Shown here piece after piece: positions 976 through 40,826 of a DNA stretch of 64,000 nt; position 1 is the stretch's first letter; each line of letters opens with the position of its first letter. The notes beneath the pieces are model-generated. The model did not search any database, was not told where the DNA came from, and saw only the letters and a list, made by a program, of their open reading frames with translations. Position numbers and translations under genes: made by a program. Origin of the DNA: Isurus oxyrinchus (taxonomy: Eukaryota); assembly GCA_026770705.1 (NCBI GenBank), contig JANJGN010000210.1, forward strand, positions 806,001 through 870,000. The letters are read 5' to 3'.

Positions 976-1526
976 ATGTACATACGATTGGAAAATATCG
1001 TACTAACAGTCACTGGTATTCAGTTTAGAGTTCTATGGTTATTATATAGGTACCATTACAAAGGTACTTTCGAAGGGTTATTGCTGTTTTGGGGGGGACG
1101 TGGAGAGGGGAGGGGGCATCAGTCAATTTGAACAGAGCCAATTTTCAAAGCTGCAATGATATAAATGACGAGATAAATTCTCTATCACCAAGTGCTGTTG
1201 ATTGAGAAATAAATGGTGCCAAAATAATGGGGAAGATGCTCTGCTCTTCCATTTTAATCCACTGAAAGGTACGTCATTCAGATGACATCAAAATGTTCTC
1301 TTTTAGTAATGGGATAGAGGCGGAAAAAGAGGTGTGGGTTTCTAAAGAGGGAACCGACAAGTGAGGGTCACCAAATAATGGAAATAATAAATGATCAAAT
1401 GTGGATGTGGGCTTTAGTTGGAATATATTTGGATATGTTTATAGTTCTAGTCTAATTTCGAGTTGTTTGGTTACTTAATGATCACAAATCAGAGGCTAAC
1501 TTGTTCGATCGGCCATTCTTTCCCAG

Positions 1527-1826
1527 CGACACCGTCTTCGCCCACTCTCTACAGCCTGGTCTCCTCCTGTCAGCAACACAACCCCGACGGCTCCTTCACC
1601 TACGGCTGTTTGGCAATGGACTACTCCCCAGAAATCACCAGCCTGACCTGGAAGAAAGATGGGCAGCCGATCGCTACTGGATTTAAGACTTACCCGTCGG
1701 TGAGAAACCAGAAGGGAACTTTCACCCTGAGCAGCCAGTTAACCATCACCGAGTCAGATGGAGAATGCAGCAAAATCAAGTGTGAGGTTCGATACAGCGG
1801 CTCAGACAAGAGCATTGAAATGCACT
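1527..1826 (+). CDS. IGHM: IgM heavy chain constant exon CH1
   Basis: ttcccag acceptor and T|gtaagt donor, 300 bp, phase 1. (A)[14 protein letters not shown]...[10 protein letters not shown]...TWKK...SSQLTI...KCEV is a C1-set domain resembling shark C-mu1. Confidence 0.95.
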
Positions 1827-2040
1827 GTAAGTATTGGGGAACCTGTGAGAAACAGAAAGACAGTGATTGACCTGTATAGGGCCTTGGCTGTAACGCATTT
1901 ATAGTGCTCTGCATAGTTCTGATCCCTGGAAATTCCAAGTTCGTGTCCATCGACCGCAAAGAGCCTGTTAAAATATAAGAACTTATTGTATCTGTTATCA
2001 ATTTCTTCTGCAAGAAATGGCTAACCTTTGTTTTTTGAAG

Positions 2041-2355
2041 GTCCTCGTCCTGACTTACCTCCAACTGTTCTCCTCACCGTGAGTTCCAGAGATGAAATCA
2101 CAAGCAAAAAATTTGCAATCGCCGTCTGTTCAATCATCGATTTCCGTCCGAAGCCATTCACCGTGAAGTGGCTGAAAAATGGACAATCCATAAATTCAGG
2201 AATTGTCACCTCTCCCGCCTTTGGAATGAACGGGAACTTCTCGGCGACCAGTCGGCTGCAAGTCTCCGCTGGGGAATGGTTCAGCGACGCAGTCTATACC
2301 TGTCAGGTCACTCACCAAGGGGTCACCCAAAGTCGAAACGCCACCAAGTGTGAGG
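2041..2355 (+). CDS. IGHM: IgM heavy chain constant exon CH2
   Basis: ttttgaag acceptor and G|gtaag donor, 315 bp. PPTVLL...[10 protein letters not shown]...KWLKNG...FSATSRL...EW...YTCQVTH. Confidence 0.95.
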
Positions 2356-2979
2356 GTAAGAAATACAAACCGTGGAAGCAATAGATCATTCTCCACTCCG
2401 GTGTTAATCAAATCAGGAATTTATTGGAGTTAGTAGAAAGCACGAAACAACATCTAATTTACTATCATATAGTTGGTGTTTCATTCCGATGTAAGGGCTG
2501 CATTCGGATTATTCACCATTCAGGATTTGATCACATCACGTCTCTGCACTGACGTCATAGAGTATGTGAGGTGGACTTGATATCAGCTTTACCTTGAGTC
2601 AGCTGATCATATTTGGAGAGGCAGAAGGTATCTGGAACCCTTCACTGGTAACAGCTTCGAGACAGAGTGTTGGAAAGTGCACCCACCCTTTTTATAAAAC
2701 ATATTTCAGTCCTGTATTCCAGGGCCCAGGAATGATACATTTGTATTGGGACTGGGGCAACGCAGATTTATGAGAATGTTACCGGGGCTGAACGACTTAA
2801 ATTATGAGAACAATTTACACAGACCAAGCTGGTTTTCCATTGTGTAAAGAAGATTAAAAACGATAGTTAGAGGTTGATATGTCCCAGGTGATTTATTCTC
2901 CTTCAGGGAGAGAAGACTGAACACTGCTGTCCTGCTTCTGAAGGTGAAACTTTGGTTGATTTTCATTTCTGTCTCACAG

Positions 2980-3291
2980 GCGATCACCAATGCCTCAACG
3001 ATCCCACAATTACTCTATTGCCACCTCCAATAGAACAAGTCTTACTGGAGGCGACCGTGACCTTAACCTGCATCGTTTCTAATGCTCCTTTTGGAGTCCT
3101 CGTGTCCTGGACACAAGAGAAGAAGCCTTTGAAATCAGAGATCGCCGTCCAACCGGGAGAGGATCCCGACAGCGTGGTCAGCAACGTAAACATCTCGACA
3201 CAAGCCTGGCTGAGTGGGGCTGAGTTCTACTGCGTGGTGAGCCATCAGGATCTGCCGACTCCTTTAAGAAGTTCCATCCACAAGGAACCAG
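2980..3291 (+). CDS. IGHM: IgM heavy chain constant exon CH3
   Basis: ctcacag acceptor and G|gtgag donor, 312 bp. [23 protein letters not shown]...SW...[20 protein letters not shown]. Confidence 0.95.
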
Positions 3292-4005
3292 GTGAGCGGT
3301 GAGATTGAAGCAATAAGTTGTTCAATGTGTCTATTTCCAGTGTAAATGTAAGGATCAGTATTTACTATTCAGTGTATTCATGGTCTACTCTGATTAGCAA
3401 TTTCGCCAACGAAACGCCCTGGGCCTGTGGACTTTCAGGAGGAAATTGATAAGTAGATGAATGAACAATGAATTGAAGGCTGTGCCATTGGGTTTAGATG
3501 AAGCAAGATGGGAGGAGCCTGGTGCGAAGCTGAAACACCAACATGGACCAGTTGGGCAGAATGGCCTGTTTCTATGCTGTAAACTTTGAGAAACTTTCTC
3601 GTCCAACCCTATAAGTTCTCAAGGAAAAGGATTGTGCCACCTCTGCTCCGAGCTGGAAAGCCGGACAGATCCCAAACTATTTTATTTATTAATTCATGGG
3701 ATGTGGGCATCGCTGGCTGGGCCAGAGTTATTGCCCATCCCTAATTGCCCTTGACAAGGTGTTGGTGAGCTGCCTTCTTGAACTGCTGCAGTCCATGTGG
3801 TGTAGATACACCCACAGTGCTGTTAGGAAGGGAGTTCCAGAATTTTGATTCAGCTATAGTGAAGGATCGGTGATATATTTCCAAGAAGTGGATAATGAAA
3901 AACCTTAATATTCATCACAAAACACGTTACTCTCACATCTAACCAGTGGTTTCATTGTCTATGAATGTATCCAGTTTATTAACATTTATTGTACATTTTC
4001 TGCAG

Positions 4006-4397
4006 TTAAAGACCCGCGGGAACCGTCCGTGTCTGTCCTCCTGCCCTCGGCAGAACATGTCTCCGCTCAGGGATTCGTCTCCCTCAGCTGCTTAGTGACA
4101 GGTTTCTCCCCGCGAGAGATTTTCGTCAAGTGGACTGTCAATGACAAGCCGGTGAATCCCGGAAACTACAAGAACACCGAGGTAGTGGCGGACAACGGCA
4201 ATCGCTCCTTCTTCATGTACAGCCTGTTATCCATTGCAGCGGAGGAGTGGGCCAGCGGCGCTTCTTACTCCTGTGTGGTGGGACATGAAGCGATCCCCTT
4301 GAAGATCATCAACAGAACGGTTGATAAATCCAGCGGTAAACCGAGTTTTGTGAACATTTCCCTTGCACTGATGGACACCGTTAATTCATGTCAATGA
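4006..4397 (+). CDS. IGHM: IgM heavy chain CH4 plus secretory tailpiece
   Basis: ttctgcag acceptor; EPSVSVLLP...[11 protein letters not shown]...[12 protein letters not shown]...VDKSS. Internal donor G|gtaaa after 4335 for the membrane form. Tail [20 protein letters not shown] has an N-glycosylation site and a penultimate Cys. Confidence 0.96.
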
Positions 4398-22774: not shown

Positions 22775-23985
22775 GATAAAGGGGAGCCTGTAGACATACT
22801 GTACTTGGATTTCCAGAAGGCATTTGATAAGATGCCACATCAAAGGTTATCGCGACAAATAAAAGCTCATGGTGTAGGATGTAACATGTTAGTGTGGATA
22901 GAATATTGACTGGCTGGCAGAAAACAGAGAGTATGCATAAATTGGTCTTTGTCTTATTGGCAGAATGTAATGAGTGGAGTCCCACAGGATCCGTGCTGGC
23001 ACCTCAACTTTTTACAATTGATATCAATGACTTAGATGAGGGGAGAGAAGCCATTGTAGCTAAATTTGCAGATGACATGAAGATATGTAGAAATGTATGT
23101 TGTGAAGAGGACATAAGGAGGTTGCAGACGCATATAGATAGGCTGACTGATTGGGCAGAGATCTGGCAAATGGAGTTTAATGTTGGAAAATGTGAAGTTG
23201 TTCACTTTAGCAGGAAGAATAAAAAAATAGAGTGTTACTTAAATGGAGAATGACTGCAGAATTCCAAGGTGAAGAGGGATCTAGGTGTTCTAGTGCATGA
23301 GGCACAAAAAGTTAGTATGCAGGTATAGCAAGTAGTTAAGAAGGCTAAGGGAATACTTTTCTTTATTACGAGAGGAATTGAACATCAAAGCAAGGATGTT
23401 ATGCTTCAGTTATACAGGGCATTGGTGAGACCACATATCAAATACAGTGTGCAGTTTTTAGTCTCCTTATTCAAAAAAAGATGTAAATACATTGGAGGTG
23501 GTTCAAAGGAGGTTTACTAGATTGCTACCTGAATGAGCGGGTTGTCTTTTGAGGATAGGTTGGACAGGTTAGGCTTGTTTCCACTGGAGTTTAGAAAAGG
23601 GAGGGGTGACTTGATTGAAGTATATAAGATCCTGAATGGTCTTGACAAGGTGGATATGCAAAGGATGTTTCCTCTTGTGGGTGAGTCCAAAACTAGGGGC
23701 ATTGTTTTGAAATTAGGAGGCACCCTTTTAGGACAGAGGTGAGGAGAATTTTTTTCTCCGAGGACTCTGGAACTCCCTGCCTCAGAAGTCAGTGGTGGTG
23801 GAGTCATTAAATATTTTTAAGGCAGAGGTAGATAGATTCTTGTTAGGCACAGGAATCAAAGTTTATCGGGGGTAGATGGGAATGTGGAATTTGAAATGCA
23901 AGTAATCAGTCATGATTATATTGAATGGCGGCGTGGGCTCAAGGGGCTGAATGACCTAGTTATTTTCCTATTTTGCATGTTCGCA
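22775..23985 (+). mobile_element. CR1-type LINE RT fragment nested in an L2 fragment
   Basis: YLDFQKAFD, GSVLAPQLFTIDINDLDEG...KFADDMK...WQMEFNVGKCEV and DRLGLFPLEFR, with stops and frameshifts. Confidence 0.9.
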
Positions 23986-30274: not shown

Positions 30275-30585
30275 ATCTGAGCGATGGAGATTCTGTTACT
30301 CAGCGCGAATCCTCGCTCACACAGGCAGAGCGAGAAGATGTCGCTTTAACCTGCATCTTTACTGGCGATGGTTATTACTTATCCTGGTGCTGTCAATACC
30401 CAGACAGACAGCCCGAGTTTGCACTCCAGAGACACATGGGCGGTGATTCTGAATTTAAGGCGGATTTTGCTTAGAGCCGGTTTTCTGATACATTCCAGCA
30501 GACAGACAGATTGTACCGATTGACCTTCTCGGAGCTGCGGCTGTCTGACACCGCAGTATATTACTGTGCACTGAGTCTCATAGCG
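30275..30585 (+). pseudogene. TCR V alpha/delta pseudogene (V exon and degenerate heptamer)
   Basis: ttccag|(D)LSDGDSVTQRESSLTQAEREDVALTCIFTGDGYYLSWCCQYPDRQPEFALQRH...ADFA*SRFS...LTFSELRLSDTAVYYCALS. TAG at 30472; heptamer CATAGCG at 30579-30585; no nonamer or leader found. Confidence 0.9.
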
Positions 30586-31062
30586 ATTGTTCCTCGTTCA
30601 ATAACTGCTGCAGCTTTCTGGGTTACAGCTTCTCTCTGTTGAGGGCTGTTTACCACAGCGGGTCAGACACTGTCACGTGAATCCATTCCTACTAGCAATA
30701 AAACAAGCACAAGAACAAGTACAACAAAAACTGCATCTGAAATCGGTCCCTTTGATTGCTGACCCTCTTCCCGATGATTGCATTAACGTTATGGGGGCTG
30801 AATTGGCTGCTCGCCATTCCCCATTTCCCAAAACTATCTCCAGACCCTTTCCTGGAACCGTTCTACTAGTTTAGCTTCAGAGGCAGTTCGTGGCAAACAG
30901 AAAAGGAATAATTGTTCTGAAACATCAGTCTGCAGTGGAAACAGCAGTACTCCAAGCTATAAGGGCGTAATAATTATATGAACCAGTAAATGTTCCTAAA
31001 TGTAAAAGAAATTTGGACATATTAAAACAGAGCATGTGTAATCTGAGCAGTTCCTGAAAGTG

Positions 31063-31078
31063 TGCTGCCATCTTGCGG
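31063..31078 (-). promoter_or_regulatory. CTCF-like site 1
   Basis: TGCTGCCATCTTGCGG, reverse complement CCGCAAGATGGCAGCA. Confidence 0.55.
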
Positions 31079-31503
31079 GAGAAATCAGAATTGTCCCCGT
31101 CATTGTTTCCTTCAGTTCAGAGAACTGTTGTTCAGGAATTATCTTCCGAAGACACTCAAAGGGCACAAATCCCTACGGCAATCCTCATAAGCGCCATCTA
31201 ATTACGTTCATGTTGAACAATGGCTCTCTCTTTGATGATTGCATGAACGGAATGAGGGCAGAATTGGCTGCTCCTTATTCCCATTAAGAAAACACACTCC
31301 CACCCGCTTTCCTGGTGCCAGTTCAGTTGGTTTCCCGCTTCTTCTGACATGGCTGCAATAATTGGTTGTTTCTACCGGCCTGCAGGGGAAGCAGAAGTCC
31401 GCCAGCTCGAGACGATTCGAATAATTTGATGAGCCTGTTTAAATGTCCCTCAGTGTTAAAGACTTTCGGACATATTGAAAAGAATTATCCGTTTCTGAGG
31501 TGT

Positions 31504-31519
31504 TGCTGCCACCTGGTGG
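31504..31519 (-). promoter_or_regulatory. CTCF-like site 2
   Basis: TGCTGCCACCTGGTGG, reverse complement CCACCAGGTGGCAGCA, matching the CTCF core consensus. Confidence 0.7.
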
Positions 31520-32423
31520 AAGCAATCAGAATGCCGCCGGCAATATTTTCTTCAATTCAGAGCGACTGCTTAGGAGTAATATTTCTAGGAGACTCAAAAG
31601 GTAAGTAAGATCGATTGTTGTAATTCTATATCGTGATATTACTATAGTTGCTGCACTAGGGTGTACCTCTTTTTATATCACATTACACTGAGTGGTCAGC
31701 ATTGATTGTTGCCTGAATATACAATGTGTGAAGGCGTAAGTTTGGTGAGTGAGGGTGTTCAGTGAAGATACAAATTAATTAATCAAAATAAATGTAATTC
31801 GCTCAATAAAGATGGCAGGAGAGGTGATGTGTCTCGGCTGCAGCATGTGTGAGCTACTGGCTTGCACTGCAATCCATGGCAACCACATAAGACCATAAGA
31901 CTTAGGAGCAGAAGTAGGCCATTCGGCCCATCGAGTCTAGGTCCGCCATTCAGTGAGATCATGGCTATTCTGATAATCCTCAACTCCACTTTCCTGTCTT
32001 TCCACTATCACCCATGATTCACTTACTTACTGTATTTCTCAACCTTGGATATATTTAACGACCTAGCCTCTTTGGTAAACAATTCCACAGATTGACGACC
32101 CTCTGAGAGAATAGATTCCTCCTCATCTCTATTTTAAGTGGGGGGCCCCATTACTCTGCGATTATGCCCACCCCCACCCCCACCCTCCCCCCTCCCCCCC
32201 CCCATCCCACGTCCTAGGAAACCCTGTGCCACTCTGCGTAACATCTGTCGCTTGTAAAATGCTAGAGTCAATTATTAAGGAAGTAGTAACAACCTAACTA
32301 GTGTCTTACAAATGTTCAACATGACCTCATTACTCTTTTCCACAATGCCCCTATTAATAAAGCCTAAGATACTATGCTTTATTAACTGCTCTCTCAACAT
32401 GCTGTGCCATCTTCAATAGCTTA

Positions 32424-33315: not shown

Positions 33316-33358
33316 ATGGGAATCCTCCTTGTTTTCACCCTGTGTGTCTGTATACCCT
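33316..33358 (+). CDS. Leader exon of the NAR-TCR V
   Basis: MGILLVFTLCVCIP followed by T|gtgagt; phase 1, in frame with the V exon. Confidence 0.9.
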
Positions 33359-33506
33359 GTGAGTACCGATCAAACAAACCGACATTGTGTGGGTTTAATA
33401 TAAAGCTGCTTGAGTCCATCCCAATTACAGACAATGTCTGCGGGTTTAACCCCGCTCCGTGGTTCGGCTCTGATGGTCCATTACACTCTCTCTGTTTAAT
33501 TTCCAG

Positions 33507-33794
33507 GCTCTTTCAGTCAGTCAGTGACACAGACCCCAGCAGCGGTGACCAGGAAGGAGTGTCAGTCTCTCACCATCACCTGTGTTTATTATGGTTATTA
33601 TTATTTACAAAATGGACATTTCTTCAAACAAACCCAGACCGGGACAGAGTGGGAGCGGATCTCCAGCGGGGAGAGATTTGTTGTGTCGGTGAATAAAGCA
33701 GGAAAGACATTTTCACTGGAAATTCGGGACGTGAGAGTTGAAGACACCGCCAACTATTACTGTAAAGCTCAGTACAGATACAACATTGGTTAAT
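33507..33794 (+). CDS. NAR-TCR variable segment (IgNAR-like V)
   Basis: ttccag acceptor. SQSVTQTPAAVTRKECQSLTITCVYYGYYYLQNGHFFKQTQTGTEWERISSGERFVVSVNKAGKTFSLEIRDVRVEDTANYYCKAQYRYNIG*. Short V lacking the CDR2 region as in IgNAR, with an extra FR1 Cys and a YYCKA ending. Confidence 0.9.
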
Positions 33795-33822
33795 CACAGA
33801 GGAAAAGGCCTGAACAAATAGC
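33795..33822 (+). other. RSS of the NAR-TCR V, best read as 12-spacer
   Basis: CACAGAG + gaaaaggcctga (12) + ACAAATAGC (7/9 match to ACAAAAACC). A 23-spacer reading gives TGTACAATT. Confidence 0.65.
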
Positions 33823-34136
33823 TCTGTACAATTAAAATATATATTCTCCGGGCCCAGATAGTGAATTGTCGGGTTGATGTTATCATCGCTGGAATCTGAT
33901 TACGTTTTATTGTAATTTCCACCATTCCATTATCTTTCTTTGATATTTGTCTCGGTTTATATGAAGCGAACATCTCGTTCCCTGGACCAGTTACTCAGCG
34001 CTCAGGGCCTCACAAAGCACAGTGTCAGCCGGCAGACATTTTGAAACATTGAATATTGTTTATTTTTTTCAATCCGCTGAAAATATGGCAGTTTCTACTG
34101 TCTGGTGATGATTTCCCGCCAGGTTGAGTTGTCGGT

Positions 34137-34175
34137 GGTTCTTGTGCCGGGGAGACTGATAGCAGTGTTACTGTG
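34137..34175 (-). other. 23-spacer RSS 5' of the NAR-TCR J
   Basis: GGTTCTTGT + 23 nt + TACTGTG on the + strand. Confidence 0.9.
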
Positions 34176-34228
34176 GTGGAAATATGATTCTGTAGATGGA
34201 TCTGGTACGATGTTGACTGTCATAGCCG
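34176..34228 (+). CDS. NAR-TCR joining segment
   Basis: WKYDSVDGSGTMLTVIA + G|gtaagt; NAR-type DGxGT motif; phase-1 donor compatible with the supporting V acceptor. Confidence 0.9.
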
Positions 34229-36843
34229 GTAAGTGACTCCAGCCACCATCCCCCTCACACCTGTTGCGACCTGTCCTAGCTAATGTTCACCCGCTGCTTT
34301 TTATTGTGATCAGTGTCAGTTCAGTCCCACGAAAAGGAAAACAGATGGTTTTCATAAGGAAACCTCTCTGTTGGCTTTTTCGATTTGGGGGCAGAATATT
34401 ATTCAGGAGCCGGGTCGAATGTCTAGGTGAAACTATGTCTGAGATCTGTCAGACTAGGCGATCAACGGGATCAGGGTGGGTGGAGGATGGAGTGTGGGGA
34501 CGTGAGGAAGGGGATTTTAAGTTTGGAGGAGCATGAGGGTTCGCTGCATCTGAACCATTATTAGTTTCACTGGTACATCGGGGACAATCAATCCCTCTGA
34601 TTCACAATCCTAATCATTTGTAAGTTTGGAATTGCTAACATTTATCTCTTTTGAATGTAGATTTTTGAGATACTGGATTGCTTTAATTTATCTGTATCTG
34701 TGATTTCTGCAAATTAAAACAACACAGAGCAGTGGGAGAGTGAGGATGATGCACTAAACTGCTAGAAGGGAACAGGAACATAAGAGAACAATGATAATCG
34801 AAACCAAGAGAAAGGTTGGATGATTTCTGGGGGCCGTTCAAAATTCTTCCTGGCACGAGGGTGGGGGGTGAGGTTTATGGAGGGACAGGCTGCAATGGGT
34901 CCAGTCTGGAATGCTAGGTAAACGCTTGGCCTCTTTGTTAGGGAAAGATCTAAATCCTTTGGAGTGAGTGCAACAAAGTTTCATCAGACTGATTGCTGAG
35001 ATAAAGTCTTACGAGAAGACATTGAGTTGTCTGGGTCTATATTGCCCCGGATTTCGAGGAATTGAGATGTAATCTCATTTGAAACATGTAATATGGAAGA
35101 CAGGGCAGATTCCCGGTGGATGTTTCCCAAGGCTGGTAAGTCTATAACTATGGGTCAAAGTTTCAGAATAAACATTCGGCCATTAGAACTCAGAAGAGGA
35201 GAAGTCAAACCATTGTTGTGAGTCTGTACCTCAGAGAGCTTTGGATACTCAGTGCTGACTGTACTTAGGACGGTATTCGATAGATCTTTGGATACTAAAA
35301 GAATGAAGGGATATGGGGGCACTGCTGTAATGTGATTTTGAGGATGGAGATCAGCGACGATGTTATTGAATGGCAGAGCAGGTTTGAAAGGTGCTATAGC
35401 GGCCTTTCCATCTCTTTGTTAGGTTCTCTGCTTTGATTTCTTACATTCCTGAGAAATGCAATCAGCAACAATCCACGTCTCTCTAGAACAATTGAACAGG
35501 CTGGGCCACTTTTCATTGTAAAAGAGGAAACCGAGGAGATATCAGAGAAACCTTTTAATTATGAATGTGTTCAATCGGGTGGATGTGGAGCAACTGGTAA
35601 TTTGTGGCTGAGTCCAGAGCAATAGGAGATTATTATAAGGTAGCCACTAATTGAACATAAAAGGCATTAAGAAAAATACATTTGCATGAACACATGTCAG
35701 AATGTGGAACTGGAGGTCACATGGAGTGGCTGGAGCAGAGAGCATTGATAGATTTATGGGAAGACTTCAAAATACAAGAGGAAGAGCGGAATAAACAGGC
35801 AGAAGGATGTGGACCGAATTGGTCATTTAGATTTCGGGCAGGAAGGGCTGGTTTGGAGTGTAAACATAGGCATCAATCAATTAGGCCGAATGGCCTGTTC
35901 CTCTTCTGCAGATTGTGTATAATGTAAAACCTTCGAGAATACTCCGCTCAGAGAACCAGGGACAGAATCAGTCAATGAGCGGAAAGAATTGAAATTGTCA
36001 GAGAGCCGGAAGAGACAGCTCCCAGTGAGTAACAGGGAAACCACTGCGGACACTGAACAGACTGATCCCAACCGACAAATGAGAAAGATTGGGACAAGTT
36101 CCCACGATTGCAAAAAGCGCAAACAGCACATTAACGTAAAATAAAGTGAGAGTAACTGTAAATATTTCAAATTAAAAGGACACGGAGAAATTTGGGCCCT
36201 CATGTTAGATGAATATAGAGAAACAGATCAAAAAGTTGATAGAAACTCCCGAGCAGTGGTCAACTCCAGCAAATGATTAACCTTTGACCACCTATGTTCA
36301 CTATCGGTTTGGCCCAATCAGTGCTGATGAATCTCATCAAGTTATTATGGATCTTGCTTTGATGCTAAACAGTTCGGTTAGTCTCGGGCAATCATTTTGG
36401 AAACTGATTGCTTCGCTGATAATAAAATGTTCCTTCTGGAAAAATAGAAACAGAAATGTAATATACATTACATGCTGCACTGCAGTTGAAATCCGGTCCA
36501 TCCTGTCGGTGCTGCCCCTCTAAAAATGCAACCCAATTATCCCCACTACTCTCTTTCCCCGTAGCCCTGTGTTTTTCCATGTTCCAACATTTATCCATTA
36601 CTCGTTTGGAAAACACCCTTAACCAGTTTCACCGTCTGTTCAGACAATGCATGCCAAATAGTAAGAACTCGCTCTGAAACACAAAATAATACCTCATCCT
36701 TTCACTGCTTCATATTTCAATAACAGTGAATGAAGTTAAAGCAGGTTATAAATTAAACAAACTCACCCAAAACCACAGCATCTACTGCGATTAACAAGTT
36801 TCCCAGTCTCTAAATAGATTAAGATCAAATTTTTCTCCTGCAG

Positions 36844-37149
36844 ATTCCAGTTCCATTGTATCCCAGAATCCGCCTGTCCAAACCTCTGCTGTGGGTGACA
36901 CCGTTTCTTTAAGCTGTGAGTATTCAGGTGTCTGTCAGTACACAGTACACTGGTACCGTCAGTCCCCAGGACAGGCTCCGGATTACTTGCTTCAGAGACA
37001 TGCTTCAGGAGAAGAGGATAAAGAAAACACTGTTGGGGGGAGAAGTTCTGCTTCTATCGATCCTGCCGAGAAAATCAGCCGGTTAAATATCTCCAAACTA
37101 CAACTGAGCGATTCCGCTGGGTATTACTGTGCACTGAGTCAGCGCACAG
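36844..37149 (+). CDS. Leaderless supporting TCR V delta of NAR-TCR
   Basis: ctcctgcag|(D)SSSIVSQNPPVQTSAVGDTVSLSCEYSGVCQYTVHWYRQSPGQAPDYLLQRH...LNISKLQLSDSAGYYCALSQRT. Open frame, non-canonical Cys in CDR1, no leader exon found nearby. Confidence 0.92.
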
Positions 37150-37188
37150 CACAGTGATACAGAGCACGGAGGGTGCCATACAAAAACC
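37150..37188 (+). other. Consensus 23-RSS of the supporting V delta
   Basis: CACAGTG + 23 nt + ACAAAAACC. Confidence 0.95.
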
Positions 37189-37207
37189 TGAACATGGAGG
37201 GATTAGA

Positions 37208-37246
37208 CACAGTGATAAAGAGCAGGGAGAGAGCTGTACAAAACCT
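37208..37246 (+). other. Second, tandemly duplicated 23-RSS
   Basis: CACAGTG + 23 nt + ACAAAACCT, 58 bp after the first, with homologous spacer and flank. Confidence 0.85.
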
Positions 37247-39681
37247 GAACATGGTGGGATTACAGACATACAATGACACAGAGTGCAGGGATATTGGGAA
37301 CTCAAACATTATTCACGAACATTTTCTCAAAGGTTGTCCGCATTTTACCGCACAGGATAAAGTGTTTAAACTGATCAGGTCTGCATTTCCTTCTCGCTCC
37401 TCCCACCCTTGAATTTTCCTCTCTGCCCAATGCTCCTGTGAATATACTTCATGAAATTATTTCACATTCTCACACTCCATTATTTCCCATGAATCGGTAT
37501 TTTACCGATTCATAATAACTCAAGTGAGTTTATTGCCACCTTTTTCTACGGGGACCGGGAGATTTTTTTCTCTCTCTTGTTTGGTCCAGTCCGCCTTTTA
37601 CCGATTGAGTTGATGAGAAGTCACCGCCTCCTGTGATTTCCCGGATTCTGCCTACGATCGGCTGAGAGATTCTCTCAACTCAACAGGACATTTACTGTCT
37701 GTTGGAACCGAAAACTGGGGCACCTCTCGACTAGAAAGGATTTAGATCCAGACATGTAAGATAGCATTTCCCACAATTGAGCGTAGCTGGGAGTGGCCTC
37801 TATCTGTGACACGGACCGCTCTGCACTCGGGACAAACGGGCCACACATGCGGACTGGAACAACACAGCCTCTTACAATCGGCCTGTTCTATTTTAATCAA
37901 CCGCCGCAGCCGCGCAGCGGGTTACTGGCCTCAAACATGACCGAAATCAAGTTTTATGAAGCTGATCAATGATTTCCCCATAATGGATGACGTCAAAATG
38001 CCTTCTATCAGTCACAGCCCATGTTTCACCCAATCAACCAGGGCCAGGGGGTCGGGGACCGGTGGGTGGGGTAACAGCCGGGAGTGGGGCGCCTCCAGCT
38101 CAGCTGATAGCCTGGGCATAAGAATGGAGGCTATTTGACTAAAGGATGTAATCAGGAGCGAAATGGTGCTGGGCAAATAAATTACAACTGTTTCAAAGTC
38201 TGGATTTAGCTCAGTTTAGGGCCCCATTGTTCATAATTGATATTAGAACATGCCTGGAGGCCGGATGTTACGTCACTATCCGTGTTCTCCTCTGTCTCCC
38301 CTGAGCAATTAGAGCTGCTCCGTCTGGTCTCACTACCTTCTCCCATTCCTCACTTAGATCAAGGGGGCGCTAATAAGATGATTTTGACCAGGTTCTCTCT
38401 TTCACCTGGTGACTCCTGTAAAGGGTACAAAGATATGAAGTCGAGGTAACTCTTTTTAGGCGAGGCCCCCAGAAGAAGTCCAGAATAAGCGTTGTCCACA
38501 AGTTGTTCATGCCCTGACAAGGTGTCTCAGGGAGTCTCCCAATGTGGTTCACTTCACAGGTGCAGCAACAATGAGCATGAAAGGGTGACCCCCTGTCAGT
38601 GGCGAGCGTCCCTTTAAACTGCGCTTGCAATTAACACCAAGATCGTGTTTTTTCCCCATCACCTGGACTCTGTTGGAGAGTGCTTTACTTGAAGCATTTG
38701 CACCAACCGCTGTGCAGCATCTTTAAGTAAAGGGAGCAGGCATTTTTGCAGCCTCACTGCGGCTCCCAGCTCTGACTTCAACTTCTTTATCGACATTACC
38801 TCGTGACCCCGAGTTCCATACTCCTCAGTTTGGGGAAACTTCCACCCAGTATCTGCCCTGTAAAGCCCCTGAAGAATACTATTTGTGTTCATGAGATCAC
38901 CTCTCATCCTCTTAAACTCTAGGGATTATAGGCCCGGGCTACTCAATCTCTTCCCATTGGACAATCCATTCATCTCAGGAATCACCCTGATGCACCTTTG
39001 CTGCACTCCTTCCAAAGCATCTTGATCTCTCTTCTGTAAGGACACCAAAACTTTACACAGTATTTCAGACTGGAGTCCATTTCAGTCCTCTCCTGCATAA
39101 AACTCACCCAACATCCTGGGGTCGGATTGCACTTTGAAAGGCGGCCAGAGATCATCCAATCCTTTTCTCCCTTTGGACGAGCTATTTCTTGCTGGTTGTC
39201 AATGAACATGCCACCAGTTTCTAATGGTTCCCTTATGTTCATGTTCTCCTTTATAAGATTAATGCATCATCCTTATTCTCTCACTGCACTATGTTGTTTC
39301 CATTAACATTAATCAGGGATACAGATAAATTACAGCAATCCCAACTCTCAACATCTGCTTTAAAATAGAGAGAAGTGTCTGCAGTTCCAAACTTTCACGT
39401 TTCAGCCTGAGGGCTGAAAAGGAGGAGAGTGATTGGTTCTACGAAGACAATTGAAAGATATGGCGGGGACAATGTCACTAATTTCAGTCATTGATTGTCC
39501 AATAATAAAATTCCATATTTACCCACATCAGGATCACTTATATCTGAAGTCCGTTGTGTCACTCTCCCGTTTTTCTCCCGGGTCAGGTATTGAACAAGCC
39601 ACTGCACGTATCCAAACTTGCCGCAGTTGTGTTGAGTTTATTCACCTGGTGCCTCATTCACATTGTACGGCTTGAGAGATT

Positions 39682-40487: not shown

Positions 40488-40826
40488 ATTTTCCGTACAG
40501 TGCCTATATCGGTTTGTATCACTGAATATTCAGCACACAATAAAACATCCCACTGTCACTCAGTTCTACATCTTTCAGGATTAAACTGAAAAAACGATCT
40601 GATACCCGGAGTGTTGAATAGATTCGGCCGCCCACACGCTCTGCTTACTGCCCTCCCTCTGAATTCATTTTGATTTTCAGTGTCAGCGCCTTCTCGTTTC
40701 TTTGGTGCCAGAAAAGATCATATCGGCGGCGACCTGTGGAGTTTCAACAGGGCAATACCATTCATCCTTTCTCCAAACATGATACTGATGATGCAGGTTG
40801 CTTAATTGTATTTGAATAGTACAGAC
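40488..40826 (-). pseudogene. TCR V alpha/delta pseudogene with decayed 23-RSS
   Basis: SNTIKQPASSVSCLEKG*MVLPC*NSTGRRRYDLFWHQRNEKAL...GRIYST...FSLILKDVELSDSGMFYCVLN, three stops. RSS TTCAGTG-23-ACGGAAAAT at 40526-40488. Not in the ORF track. Confidence 0.85.

What the first reader, a model, noticed from the sequence alone, without database searches (positions are those of the whole stretch)
33507..34228. NAR-TCR cassette with no D segment: extended V with 12-RSS facing a 23-RSS J, possibly a germline-joined V-D
Seen: the V continues nine codons past the second Cys (KAQYRYNIG), then TAA-T, before the heptamer. Its RSS fits a 12 spacer (CACAGAG-12-ACAAATAGC). The J has a clean 23-RSS. I find no RSS-flanked D in the 314 bp between them. 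Established: the NAR-TCR N-terminal domain was described as a V-D-J product; the 12/23 rule allows direct 12-to-23 joining; germline-joined V-D segments occur in shark IgH and IgNAR clusters. Inference: either a D was fused to the V in the germline and kept its 3' 12-RSS, or this cassette assembles by one-step V-J joining. Either would give a T-cell receptor domain with a partly hard-wired CDR3.
Basis: partly seen in the sequence, partly recalled or inferred. Interest (0 to 1): 0.85.

Follow-up and report, generated by a model that had tools for sequence, protein, structure and literature searches.

The report
D-less shark NAR-TCR V-J cassette
A shark T-cell-receptor gene cassette whose extra antibody-like V domain is set up to be built by one cut-and-paste step (V to J, no separate D piece), probably because V and D were fused in inherited DNA long ago; it is real and shared with close relatives, but its use in T cells is not yet shown.

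Summary
The cassette is complete. It has a leader (33316-33358) and a VNAR-type V (33507-33794). The V abuts CACAGAG-12-ACAAATAGC (33795-33822). A 314-bp gap follows, then GGTTCTTGT-23-TACTGTG (34137-34175). J (34176-34228) ends in a splice donor. A leaderless supporting V-delta (36844-37149) carries a perfect 23-RSS. No other RSS-like site and no D lie between V and J.

The layout is colinear, without indels, in an RNA contig of a related organism and in DNA contigs of a second. A white-shark gene model has the same V end and J. So it is a lineage feature, not a one-off or an assembly slip. NAR-TCR Vs of bamboo sharks and one other shark, read through their RSS, fit a 22/23 spacer and not 12, so the 12-RSS is derived.

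An old germline V-D join that kept the D's 3' 12-RSS is the best explanation, but it is unproven. The V is only about 7 nt longer than the family norm, and I could not fetch an unfused comparator. No somatic V-J joint was seen, only a germline (sterile) transcript.

This scan reached the same reading on other cassettes of this genome. Rating: new variant of a known kind, moderate interest.

The parts
31569..31600 (+). 3' end of an upstream non-coding exon (donor AAAAG|GTAAGT at 31600/31601) that is spliced to the V exon acceptor in a germline transcript
   Evidence: The loose end of RNA contig X1 record 1 matches 31569-31598 exactly. The donor is read directly.
33316..33358 (+). Leader exon (MGILLVFTLCVCIP + 1 nt), donor GTGAGT at 33359
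   Evidence: A leader-to-V splice 33358->33507 is seen in RNA contig X2 record 10, which comes from a paralogue or allele.
33507..33794 (+). NAR-type V exon. It has an a-b loop Cys (RKECQS), FFKQ in place of WYRK, and YYC. Its 3' end reads KAQYRYNIG-TAA-T.
   Evidence: The best PDB matches are all VNAR domains, E 1.5e-17. Pfam V-set. 99% identical to white-shark model P0014.
33795..33822 (+). 12-RSS of V: heptamer CACAGAG, 12-nt spacer, nonamer ACAAATAGC
   Evidence: The nonamer scores 7/9 at spacer 12 and 3/9 at spacer 23.
33823..34136 (+). 314-bp interval without D or RSS. It would be deleted together with both RSSs as a 381-bp signal circle (33795-34175).
   Evidence: Colinear without indels in X1 (RNA, organism A) and X5 (DNA, organism B).
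34137..34175 (+). 23-RSS of J: nonamer GGTTCTTGT, 23-nt spacer, heptamer TACTGTG
34176..34228 (+). J segment (G)WKYDSVDGSGTMLTVIA, phase-1 end, donor GTAAGT at 34229. It is the only J-like segment in the window.
36844..37149 (+). Leaderless supporting V-delta exon. Acceptor cag|AT, in frame with J, Cys in CDR1 (SGVCQY), ends YYCALSQRTA.
   Evidence: It matches the second domain of P0014.
37150..37188 (+). Perfect 23-RSS of the supporting V-delta (CACAGTG-23-ACAAAAACC). A second copy starts at 37208.

Best explanation
This is an intact NAR-TCR cassette of a lamnid-type shark in which the membrane-distal NAR V domain is assembled from two pieces, not three.

Proposed mechanism:
1. RAG would pair the 12-RSS behind the V (33795-33822) with the 23-RSS in front of the J (34137-34175).
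2. It would excise a 381-bp signal circle and form a single coding joint.
3. The in-frame TAA, which lies 4 nt from the V end, has to be nibbled away or shifted out of frame.
4. The leader then splices to V-J.
5. The J donor splices to the leaderless V-delta. That V-delta separately rearranges through its own 23-RSS to D/J-delta.

The most likely origin of the 12-RSS on V is an old RAG-made germline V-to-D join. That would consume the V's 23-RSS and the D's 5' 12-RSS and leave the D's 3' 12-RSS on an extended V.

Shown: the segments, the RSS spacers, the splice sites, conservation of the layout in relatives, and germline transcription.
Inferred: that the cassette actually recombines, and that the layout arose by V-D fusion.
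For: - Anatomy and RSS scores.
- There is no other RSS or D-core copy in the interval.
- The V is VNAR-like and has the NAR-TCR hallmarks listed in PMC1845163. These are the a-b loop Cys, no Trp in WYRK, and a leaderless V-delta with a CDR1 Cys.
- A 1126-nt RNA contig of organism A runs colinear from the V acceptor through both RSSs and J into the intron. It differs at 13 of 799 positions and has no gap. DNA contigs of organism B cover the interval without indel or joint.
- White-shark model P0014 has the same V end (KAQYRYNI) and the same J and J-RSS translation.
- Four NAR-TCR Vs that read through their RSS are compatible with a nonamer at spacer 22-23 (7-8/9) and not at 12 (3-4/9). They are P0004 and P0006 (Chiloscyllium punctatum), P0064 (C. 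plagiosum) and P0003. With a 23-RSS J, those Vs need a 12-D-12. This matches the published 'separate VDJ rearrangements'.
- Fully joined NAR-TCR VDJ exons occur in white-shark and basking-shark models and in DNA run X5. RAG has therefore acted germinally on this family.
- VD-J germline joins are established in shark Ig clusters (PMC4279169).
- An in-frame stop at the coding end is typical of D segments, not of V segments (my own knowledge).
Against:
- The extension beyond the family-typical V end is only about 7 nt.
- The last 13 nt share only a TGGTT pentamer with the D core (GGATGTGGTTCC...) seen in joined paralogues.
- The RSS is imperfect: heptamer position 6 and nonamer positions 6 and 8 depart from consensus.
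- No somatic V-J joint of this cassette appeared in the runs laid, and only contigs were available, not raw reads.
- The nurse-shark RSS layout comes from my memory of Criscitiello 2006, which is not held here.
- The spacer calls for other species are upper bounds from back-translation, not DNA.
Confidence: 0.6

Rival explanations
1. The cassette is D-less but did not arise by fusion. Either the V acquired a 12-spacer RSS and the D was lost by ordinary mutation, deletion or gene conversion, or a V(12)-J(23) kappa-like layout is the original state of this V subfamily.
For: The extension is short (about 7 nt) and does not resemble the D core of joined paralogues. Similar long V ends occur in Mustelus (KAQYRYDTRE, KAQYRYGTRE) and Heterodontus (QAEYRYNTG) models. 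The state is therefore old and cannot be polarised with the data in hand.
Against: Changing a 22/23 spacer to 12 and also removing a D needs two events. A single RAG join explains both. Germline RAG products are demonstrably present in this family. Orectolobiform Vs have the 22/23 type.
Confidence: 0.2
2. The cassette is a relic that no longer rearranges. It is transcribed only in germline form and contributes nothing to the repertoire.
For: There is an in-frame TAA at the V end and both the heptamer and nonamer are suboptimal. The only transcript that covers this V-J region is unrearranged and starts from a non-coding upstream exon.
Against: Leader, V, J and supporting V are all open, with intact splice sites and hallmark cysteines. 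The protein differs from the white-shark orthologue at only 5 of about 230 residues, against about 2-3% DNA divergence in the contigs laid. Sterile transcripts across unrearranged segments are what accessible loci produce (my own knowledge). The runs were not known lymphoid tissue.
Confidence: 0.15
3. A degenerate D with weak RSSs hides in the 314-bp interval, and the cassette still makes V-D-J joins.
For: Weak matches exist at a threshold of 9/16, for example CACAAAG at 34011.
Against: No pair of oppositely oriented RSS-like sites flanks any short stretch. No site reaches 11/16. A V with a 12-RSS could not join a D with a 5' 12-RSS anyway.
Confidence: 0.05

Closest known systems
Nurse shark NAR-TcR cassette (Criscitiello, Saltis & Flajnik 2006, PNAS 103:5036; described in PMC1845163 and PMC5931798)
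   Same: Leader plus a NAR-type V with an a-b loop Cys and no WYRK Trp. Its own J carries a splice donor. A dedicated leaderless supporting V-delta has a CDR1 Cys and a 23-RSS. It lies in the TCR alpha/delta region.
   Different: The published domain is a V-D-J product. Here there is no free D, and the V carries a 12-RSS where other sharks' Vs have a 22/23-type RSS.
Partly germline-joined (VD-J) shark IgH clusters (reviewed in PMC4279169)
   Same: A V fused to D material keeps the D's 3' RSS and faces the J, which leaves one somatic join and a partly fixed CDR3. The accepted cause is RAG activity in germ cells.
   Different: This is a TCR-delta-linked cassette, not an Ig cluster. The D-derived part is at most 9-13 nt and is not proven by alignment.
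Fully germline-joined NAR-TCR VDJ exons of lamniform sharks
   Same: Same V family and same locus type. They are products of germline joining.
   Different: Those exons have no RSS left and a fixed CDR3 (for example ...YKYGCGSVWEDGYAD). This cassette stopped, if it is a fusion, at the V-D step and still needs RAG.
Ig kappa-type V(12-RSS)/J(23-RSS) one-step joining
   Same: Same spacer logic and a single coding joint.
   Different: Unrelated locus. In Ig kappa no D was ever involved.
Marsupial and monotreme TCR-mu (PMC3457774, PMC2275272)
   Same: A three-domain TCR chain. One V domain has reduced or absent somatic joining: germline-joined in marsupials, D-less in platypus.
   Different: It arose by convergence. 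In TCR-mu the supporting domain is the simplified one. Here it is the membrane-distal, antigen-binding NAR domain.

Membership tests
NAR-TCR cassette | N-terminal V most similar to IgNAR V | tested here: met
   The top roughly 30 PDB matches are VNAR domains, best E 1.5e-17. Pfam V-set.
NAR-TCR cassette | Typical leader, Cys in the a-b loop, canonical Trp of WYRK absent (PMC1845163) | tested here: met
   Leader MGILLVFTLCVCIP, RKECQS, and HFFKQ in place of WYRK.
NAR-TCR cassette | Dedicated supporting V-delta without a leader, with a Cys in CDR1, spliced from the NAR J | tested here: met
   Acceptor at 36843/36844 in phase with the J donor, SGVCQY, and a 23-RSS at 37150. The splice itself was not seen in RNA for this copy.
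NAR-TCR cassette | NAR domain assembled from V, D and J (published 'separate VDJ rearrangements') | tested here: not met
   No D and no RSS pair lie between V and J. V has a 12-RSS and J a 23-RSS.
Germline-joined VD segment | RSS behind the fused segment has the spacer type of the D's 3' RSS, not that of an unfused V | tested here: met
   12 spacer here. Vs of Chiloscyllium and one other shark fit 22/23 (by back-translation).
Germline-joined VD segment | Coding end beyond the V homology aligns with a D of unfused paralogues, with the break at the RAG cut sites | not testable with these tools
Only a TGGTT pentamer is shared with the D core of joined paralogues.
Functional rearranging segment pair | Somatic V-J coding joints or signal joints in lymphoid tissue | tested here: inconclusive
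   Only contigs of four runs could be laid. They show a germline transcript and paralogue transcripts but no V-J joint.

The most novel reading that the evidence does not exclude
An ancient RAG-made germline V-D join in a T-cell receptor locus has been kept across lamnid sharks, and perhaps across galeomorph orders. It switched the NAR V's signal from 23 to 12. Under the 12/23 rule the NAR V can then pair only with its own J. It is barred from joining the 12-RSS of D-delta, J-delta or J-alpha downstream. This would be a built-in insulation of the first rearrangement from the second in a doubly rearranging gene.
Probability: 0.3. Interest if true: 0.7.

Novelty: new variant of a known kind. Interest (0 to 1): 0.5.

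Why it matters
NAR-TCR is the only known antigen-receptor chain built by two separate rearrangements, and its distal domain is thought to bind antigen alone. If that domain is made by a single V-J join in lamnid sharks, three things follow:
- Its CDR3 is partly inherited, which limits diversity.
- Germline RAG activity, known for shark antibody genes, also reshaped a T-cell receptor locus.
- The spacer switch offers a simple, testable rule for how the two rearrangements are kept apart.

None of the papers I could read describes this layout. The three primary papers were not available to me.

Tried and rejected
I could not fetch the DNA of P0001-P0006 or of any paralogous or orthologous cassette.
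- Two metagenome scans, one by protein and one by DNA pattern, found nothing.
- Criscitiello 2006, Criscitiello 2010, Deiss 2019 and Ott 2021 are not held. The papers that are held say only 'VDJ' or 'V(D)J' and give no RSS detail.
- I rejected NCBI gene models that join V to J as evidence of joining. In P0014 the 'junction' NI|AVLLWW is an annotation intron that runs from the GT in GGTTAAT to an AG inside the J-RSS spacer. Many basking-shark models show the same AVSLWW read-through. The X1 transcript reads straight through, so there is no sign that this splice is real.
- I rejected TACAGATACAACATTGG as a D, because TACAGATAC (YRY) is V proper.
- A search for the D core of joined paralogues in the window gave only chance-level hits elsewhere. 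Repeats in the V-J region are trivial.
- A tree of 50 V domains places this V with P0014, and weakly with Mustelus and Scyliorhinus copies. It cannot polarise the RSS state.
Exons were searched separately by reference. L+V and J+V-delta were concatenated only inside a script, to check the reading frame.

Full report
**Anatomy.** All parts lie on the + strand.
- The leader exon runs 33316-33358 and ends in a GTGAGT donor.
- The V exon starts at the acceptor at 33507 and is open to 33790. It is followed by TAA and one T.
- The V protein has the features given for NAR-TcR V in PMC1845163: a normal leader, a Cys in the a-b loop (RKECQS), and no Trp in the WYRK motif (HFFKQ).
- Its best matches among solved structures are all shark VNAR domains, best E 1.5e-17.
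- Directly after the coding end comes CACAGAG, then 12 nt, then ACAAATAGC. The nonamer scores 7/9 at a 12 spacer and 3/9 at a 23 spacer.
- 314 bp further on lie GGTTCTTGT, 23 nt, and TACTGTG. Then comes a J reading (G)WKYDSVDGSGTMLTVIA with a GTAAGT donor. It is the only J-like segment in the window.
- 2.6 kb downstream, an acceptor (cag|AT) opens a leaderless V-delta exon in phase with the J. This exon has the CDR1 Cys (SGVCQY) and a perfect 23-RSS at 37150.

So this is a complete NAR-TCR cassette.

**No D.** In 33700-34260 only the two RSSs named above reach 11/16 with a CAC heptamer. At 9/16 the extra hits do not form a pair around any short segment. The D core seen in joined paralogues has no copy here. 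In the whole window only seven sites reach 13/16 at exact 12 or 23 spacing, and four of them are at this cassette's segment borders. The signals are therefore not chance.

**Is the V really extended?** Only slightly.
- Homologues found by protein search run 5-8 codons past the Cys before their own heptamer. The heptamer is visible as HS(D), or TQ-stop, or AQ-stop.
- Examples are KARYRYYT and KARYWYYT (bamboo shark), KAQYRYDK and KAQYKYKT (basking shark), and KAQYDT (white shark).
- This V runs 10.3 codons.
At most the last 9-13 nt (...AACATTGGTTAAT) can be something else.
- That tail holds an in-frame stop. This is common in D segments and odd for a V (my own knowledge).

**Is the 12-RSS derived?** Four homologues are open reading frames that continue through their RSS: P0004 and P0006 (Chiloscyllium punctatum), P0064 (C. 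plagiosum) and P0003 (unnamed ENA contig). I back-translated them and took the best codon choice at every position.
- The nonamer fits at spacer 22-23 (7-8 of 9).
- It does not fit at spacer 12 (3-4 of 9).

These are upper bounds from protein, not DNA, but the contrast is the same in all four. A V with a 23-type RSS and a J with a 23-RSS need a 12-D-12 between them. That agrees with the published statement that both domains come from separate VDJ rearrangements. The present V(12)/J(23) layout is exactly what a V-to-D join would leave.

**Conservation.** I had one call of read laying.
- Run X1 (organism A) holds a 1126-nt contig that lies colinear on 33505-34303 with 13 differences and no gap. 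It covers the V, both RSSs, the interval, the J and 75 nt of intron.
- The remaining 327 nt of that contig do not lie on the stretch laid. The last 30 letters of that part match the window exactly at 31569-31598, and 31600/31601 is a perfect donor, AAAAG|GTAAGT.
- The contig is therefore spliced RNA. It is a germline (sterile) transcript that starts in a non-coding exon 1.9 kb upstream, skips the leader, and reads through the unrearranged V-J region.
- Run X5 (organism B, even depth over introns, hence DNA) covers the V-J interval at about single-copy depth with no indel and no joint.
- White-shark model P0014 is 99% identical in V. It has the same V end, the same J, and the same translation of the J-RSS.

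The D-less layout is thus inherited and shared. It is not an assembly error.

**Evidence that RAG worked on this family in the germ line.**
- Contigs of the DNA run X5 and of the RNA run X2 follow the V up to 33774 or 33780. They then continue with ...GGATGTGG.TCCGTT..., which reads YKYGC.SV / YRYGCGSVWEDG.
- The same fixed CDR3s appear in white-shark and basking-shark models P0008, P0015, P0020 and P0022.
- These are fully germline-joined VDJ exons. Partial joins (VD-J) beside full joins are the known pattern in shark Ig clusters (PMC4279169).

**What is missing.**
- No somatic V-J joint of this cassette was seen. All runs on offer were contigs, none known to be thymus or spleen.
- The tail shares only TGGTT with the D core of the joined paralogues.
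- Similar long V ends in Mustelus (KAQYRYDTRE, KAQYRYGTRE) and Heterodontus (QAEYRYNTG) models suggest the state is old. Their RSSs are unknown.
- The gene models that appear to join V and J are annotation introns and carry no weight.

**Earlier notes of this scan.** These notes are unchecked and not independent.
- Several other cassettes of the same genome were read the same way (s1-868567, s1-869584, s1-869578, s1-870790).
- One note (s1-868564) claims a fused and an unfused cassette side by side, with the break at the RAG cut sites. I could not test this.

**Verdict.**
- The D-less, one-step layout is real and is a lineage feature.
- Origin by an old germline V-D join is the best reading (about 0.6) but is not proven.
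- Function in T cells is not shown.
- I rate it a new variant of a known kind (NAR-TCR, shark germline joining), of moderate interest.

Noticed in passing
window 31245-31640 (exon end 31600), with a diverged copy at 30780-31200: A non-coding exon with a perfect donor (AAAAG|GTAAGT) is spliced to the NAR V acceptor at 33507 in an RNA contig of a related organism, giving a sterile transcript across the unrearranged V-J. A copy about 65-70% identical lies 460 bp upstream and lacks the GT donor.
   Followed up: partly
window 33504-33587 (RNA run X2, record 11): An RNA contig places a NAR J end (...GGATCCGGGACAGAGGTGATTGTCACAG, GSGTEVIVT) directly in front of a V exon start that is identical to this V over 84 nt. 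So a NAR J is spliced onto a NAR V exon, as in white-shark model P0008, which has two stacked NAR V domains. No such J is in this window. Logan contigs can be chimeric between paralogues. This is transcript-level support for the stacked-V cassettes noted elsewhere in this scan.
   Followed up: partly
window 33774-33780 (loose ends): DNA (X5) and RNA (X2) contigs of organism B continue the V into fixed CDR3s (YKYGC.SV..., YRYGCGSVWEDG...). These are fully germline-joined NAR-TCR VDJ exons of paralogous cassettes, and they are transcribed.
   Followed up: partly
window 37150-37300: Behind the supporting V-delta the 23-RSS is repeated. A perfect copy is at 37150, a second (7/7, 7/9) at 37208, and a decayed third near 37268, in units of about 58 bp. 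In DNA run X5, one contig (about 40% of the summed depth at that place) has an extra A behind 37239.
   Followed up: no
window 1463-4394: Four C1-set Ig constant-domain ORFs lie in a row on the + strand, probably C-mu exons of an IgM cluster. They sit about 29 kb upstream of the NAR-TCR cassette in the same orientation. This fits the IgH and TCR alpha/delta linkage reported in PMC12227049.
   Followed up: partly
window 30289-30567 (+) and 40537-40641 (-): There is a TCR alpha/delta-type V with an in-frame stop and no recognisable RSS after YYCAL, with an acceptor but no leader found. A V fragment (FR3 to YC) lies on the other strand. A reverse-transcriptase ORF lies at 22894-23250.
   Followed up: no
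window 33789-33790 and 34161-34162: NCBI models of white shark and basking shark bridge V and J with an 'intron' from the GT in GGTTAAT to an AG in the J-RSS spacer, which happens to keep the frame. The one transcript seen does not use it. It is an annotation artefact worth knowing when mining these genomes.
   Followed up: yes
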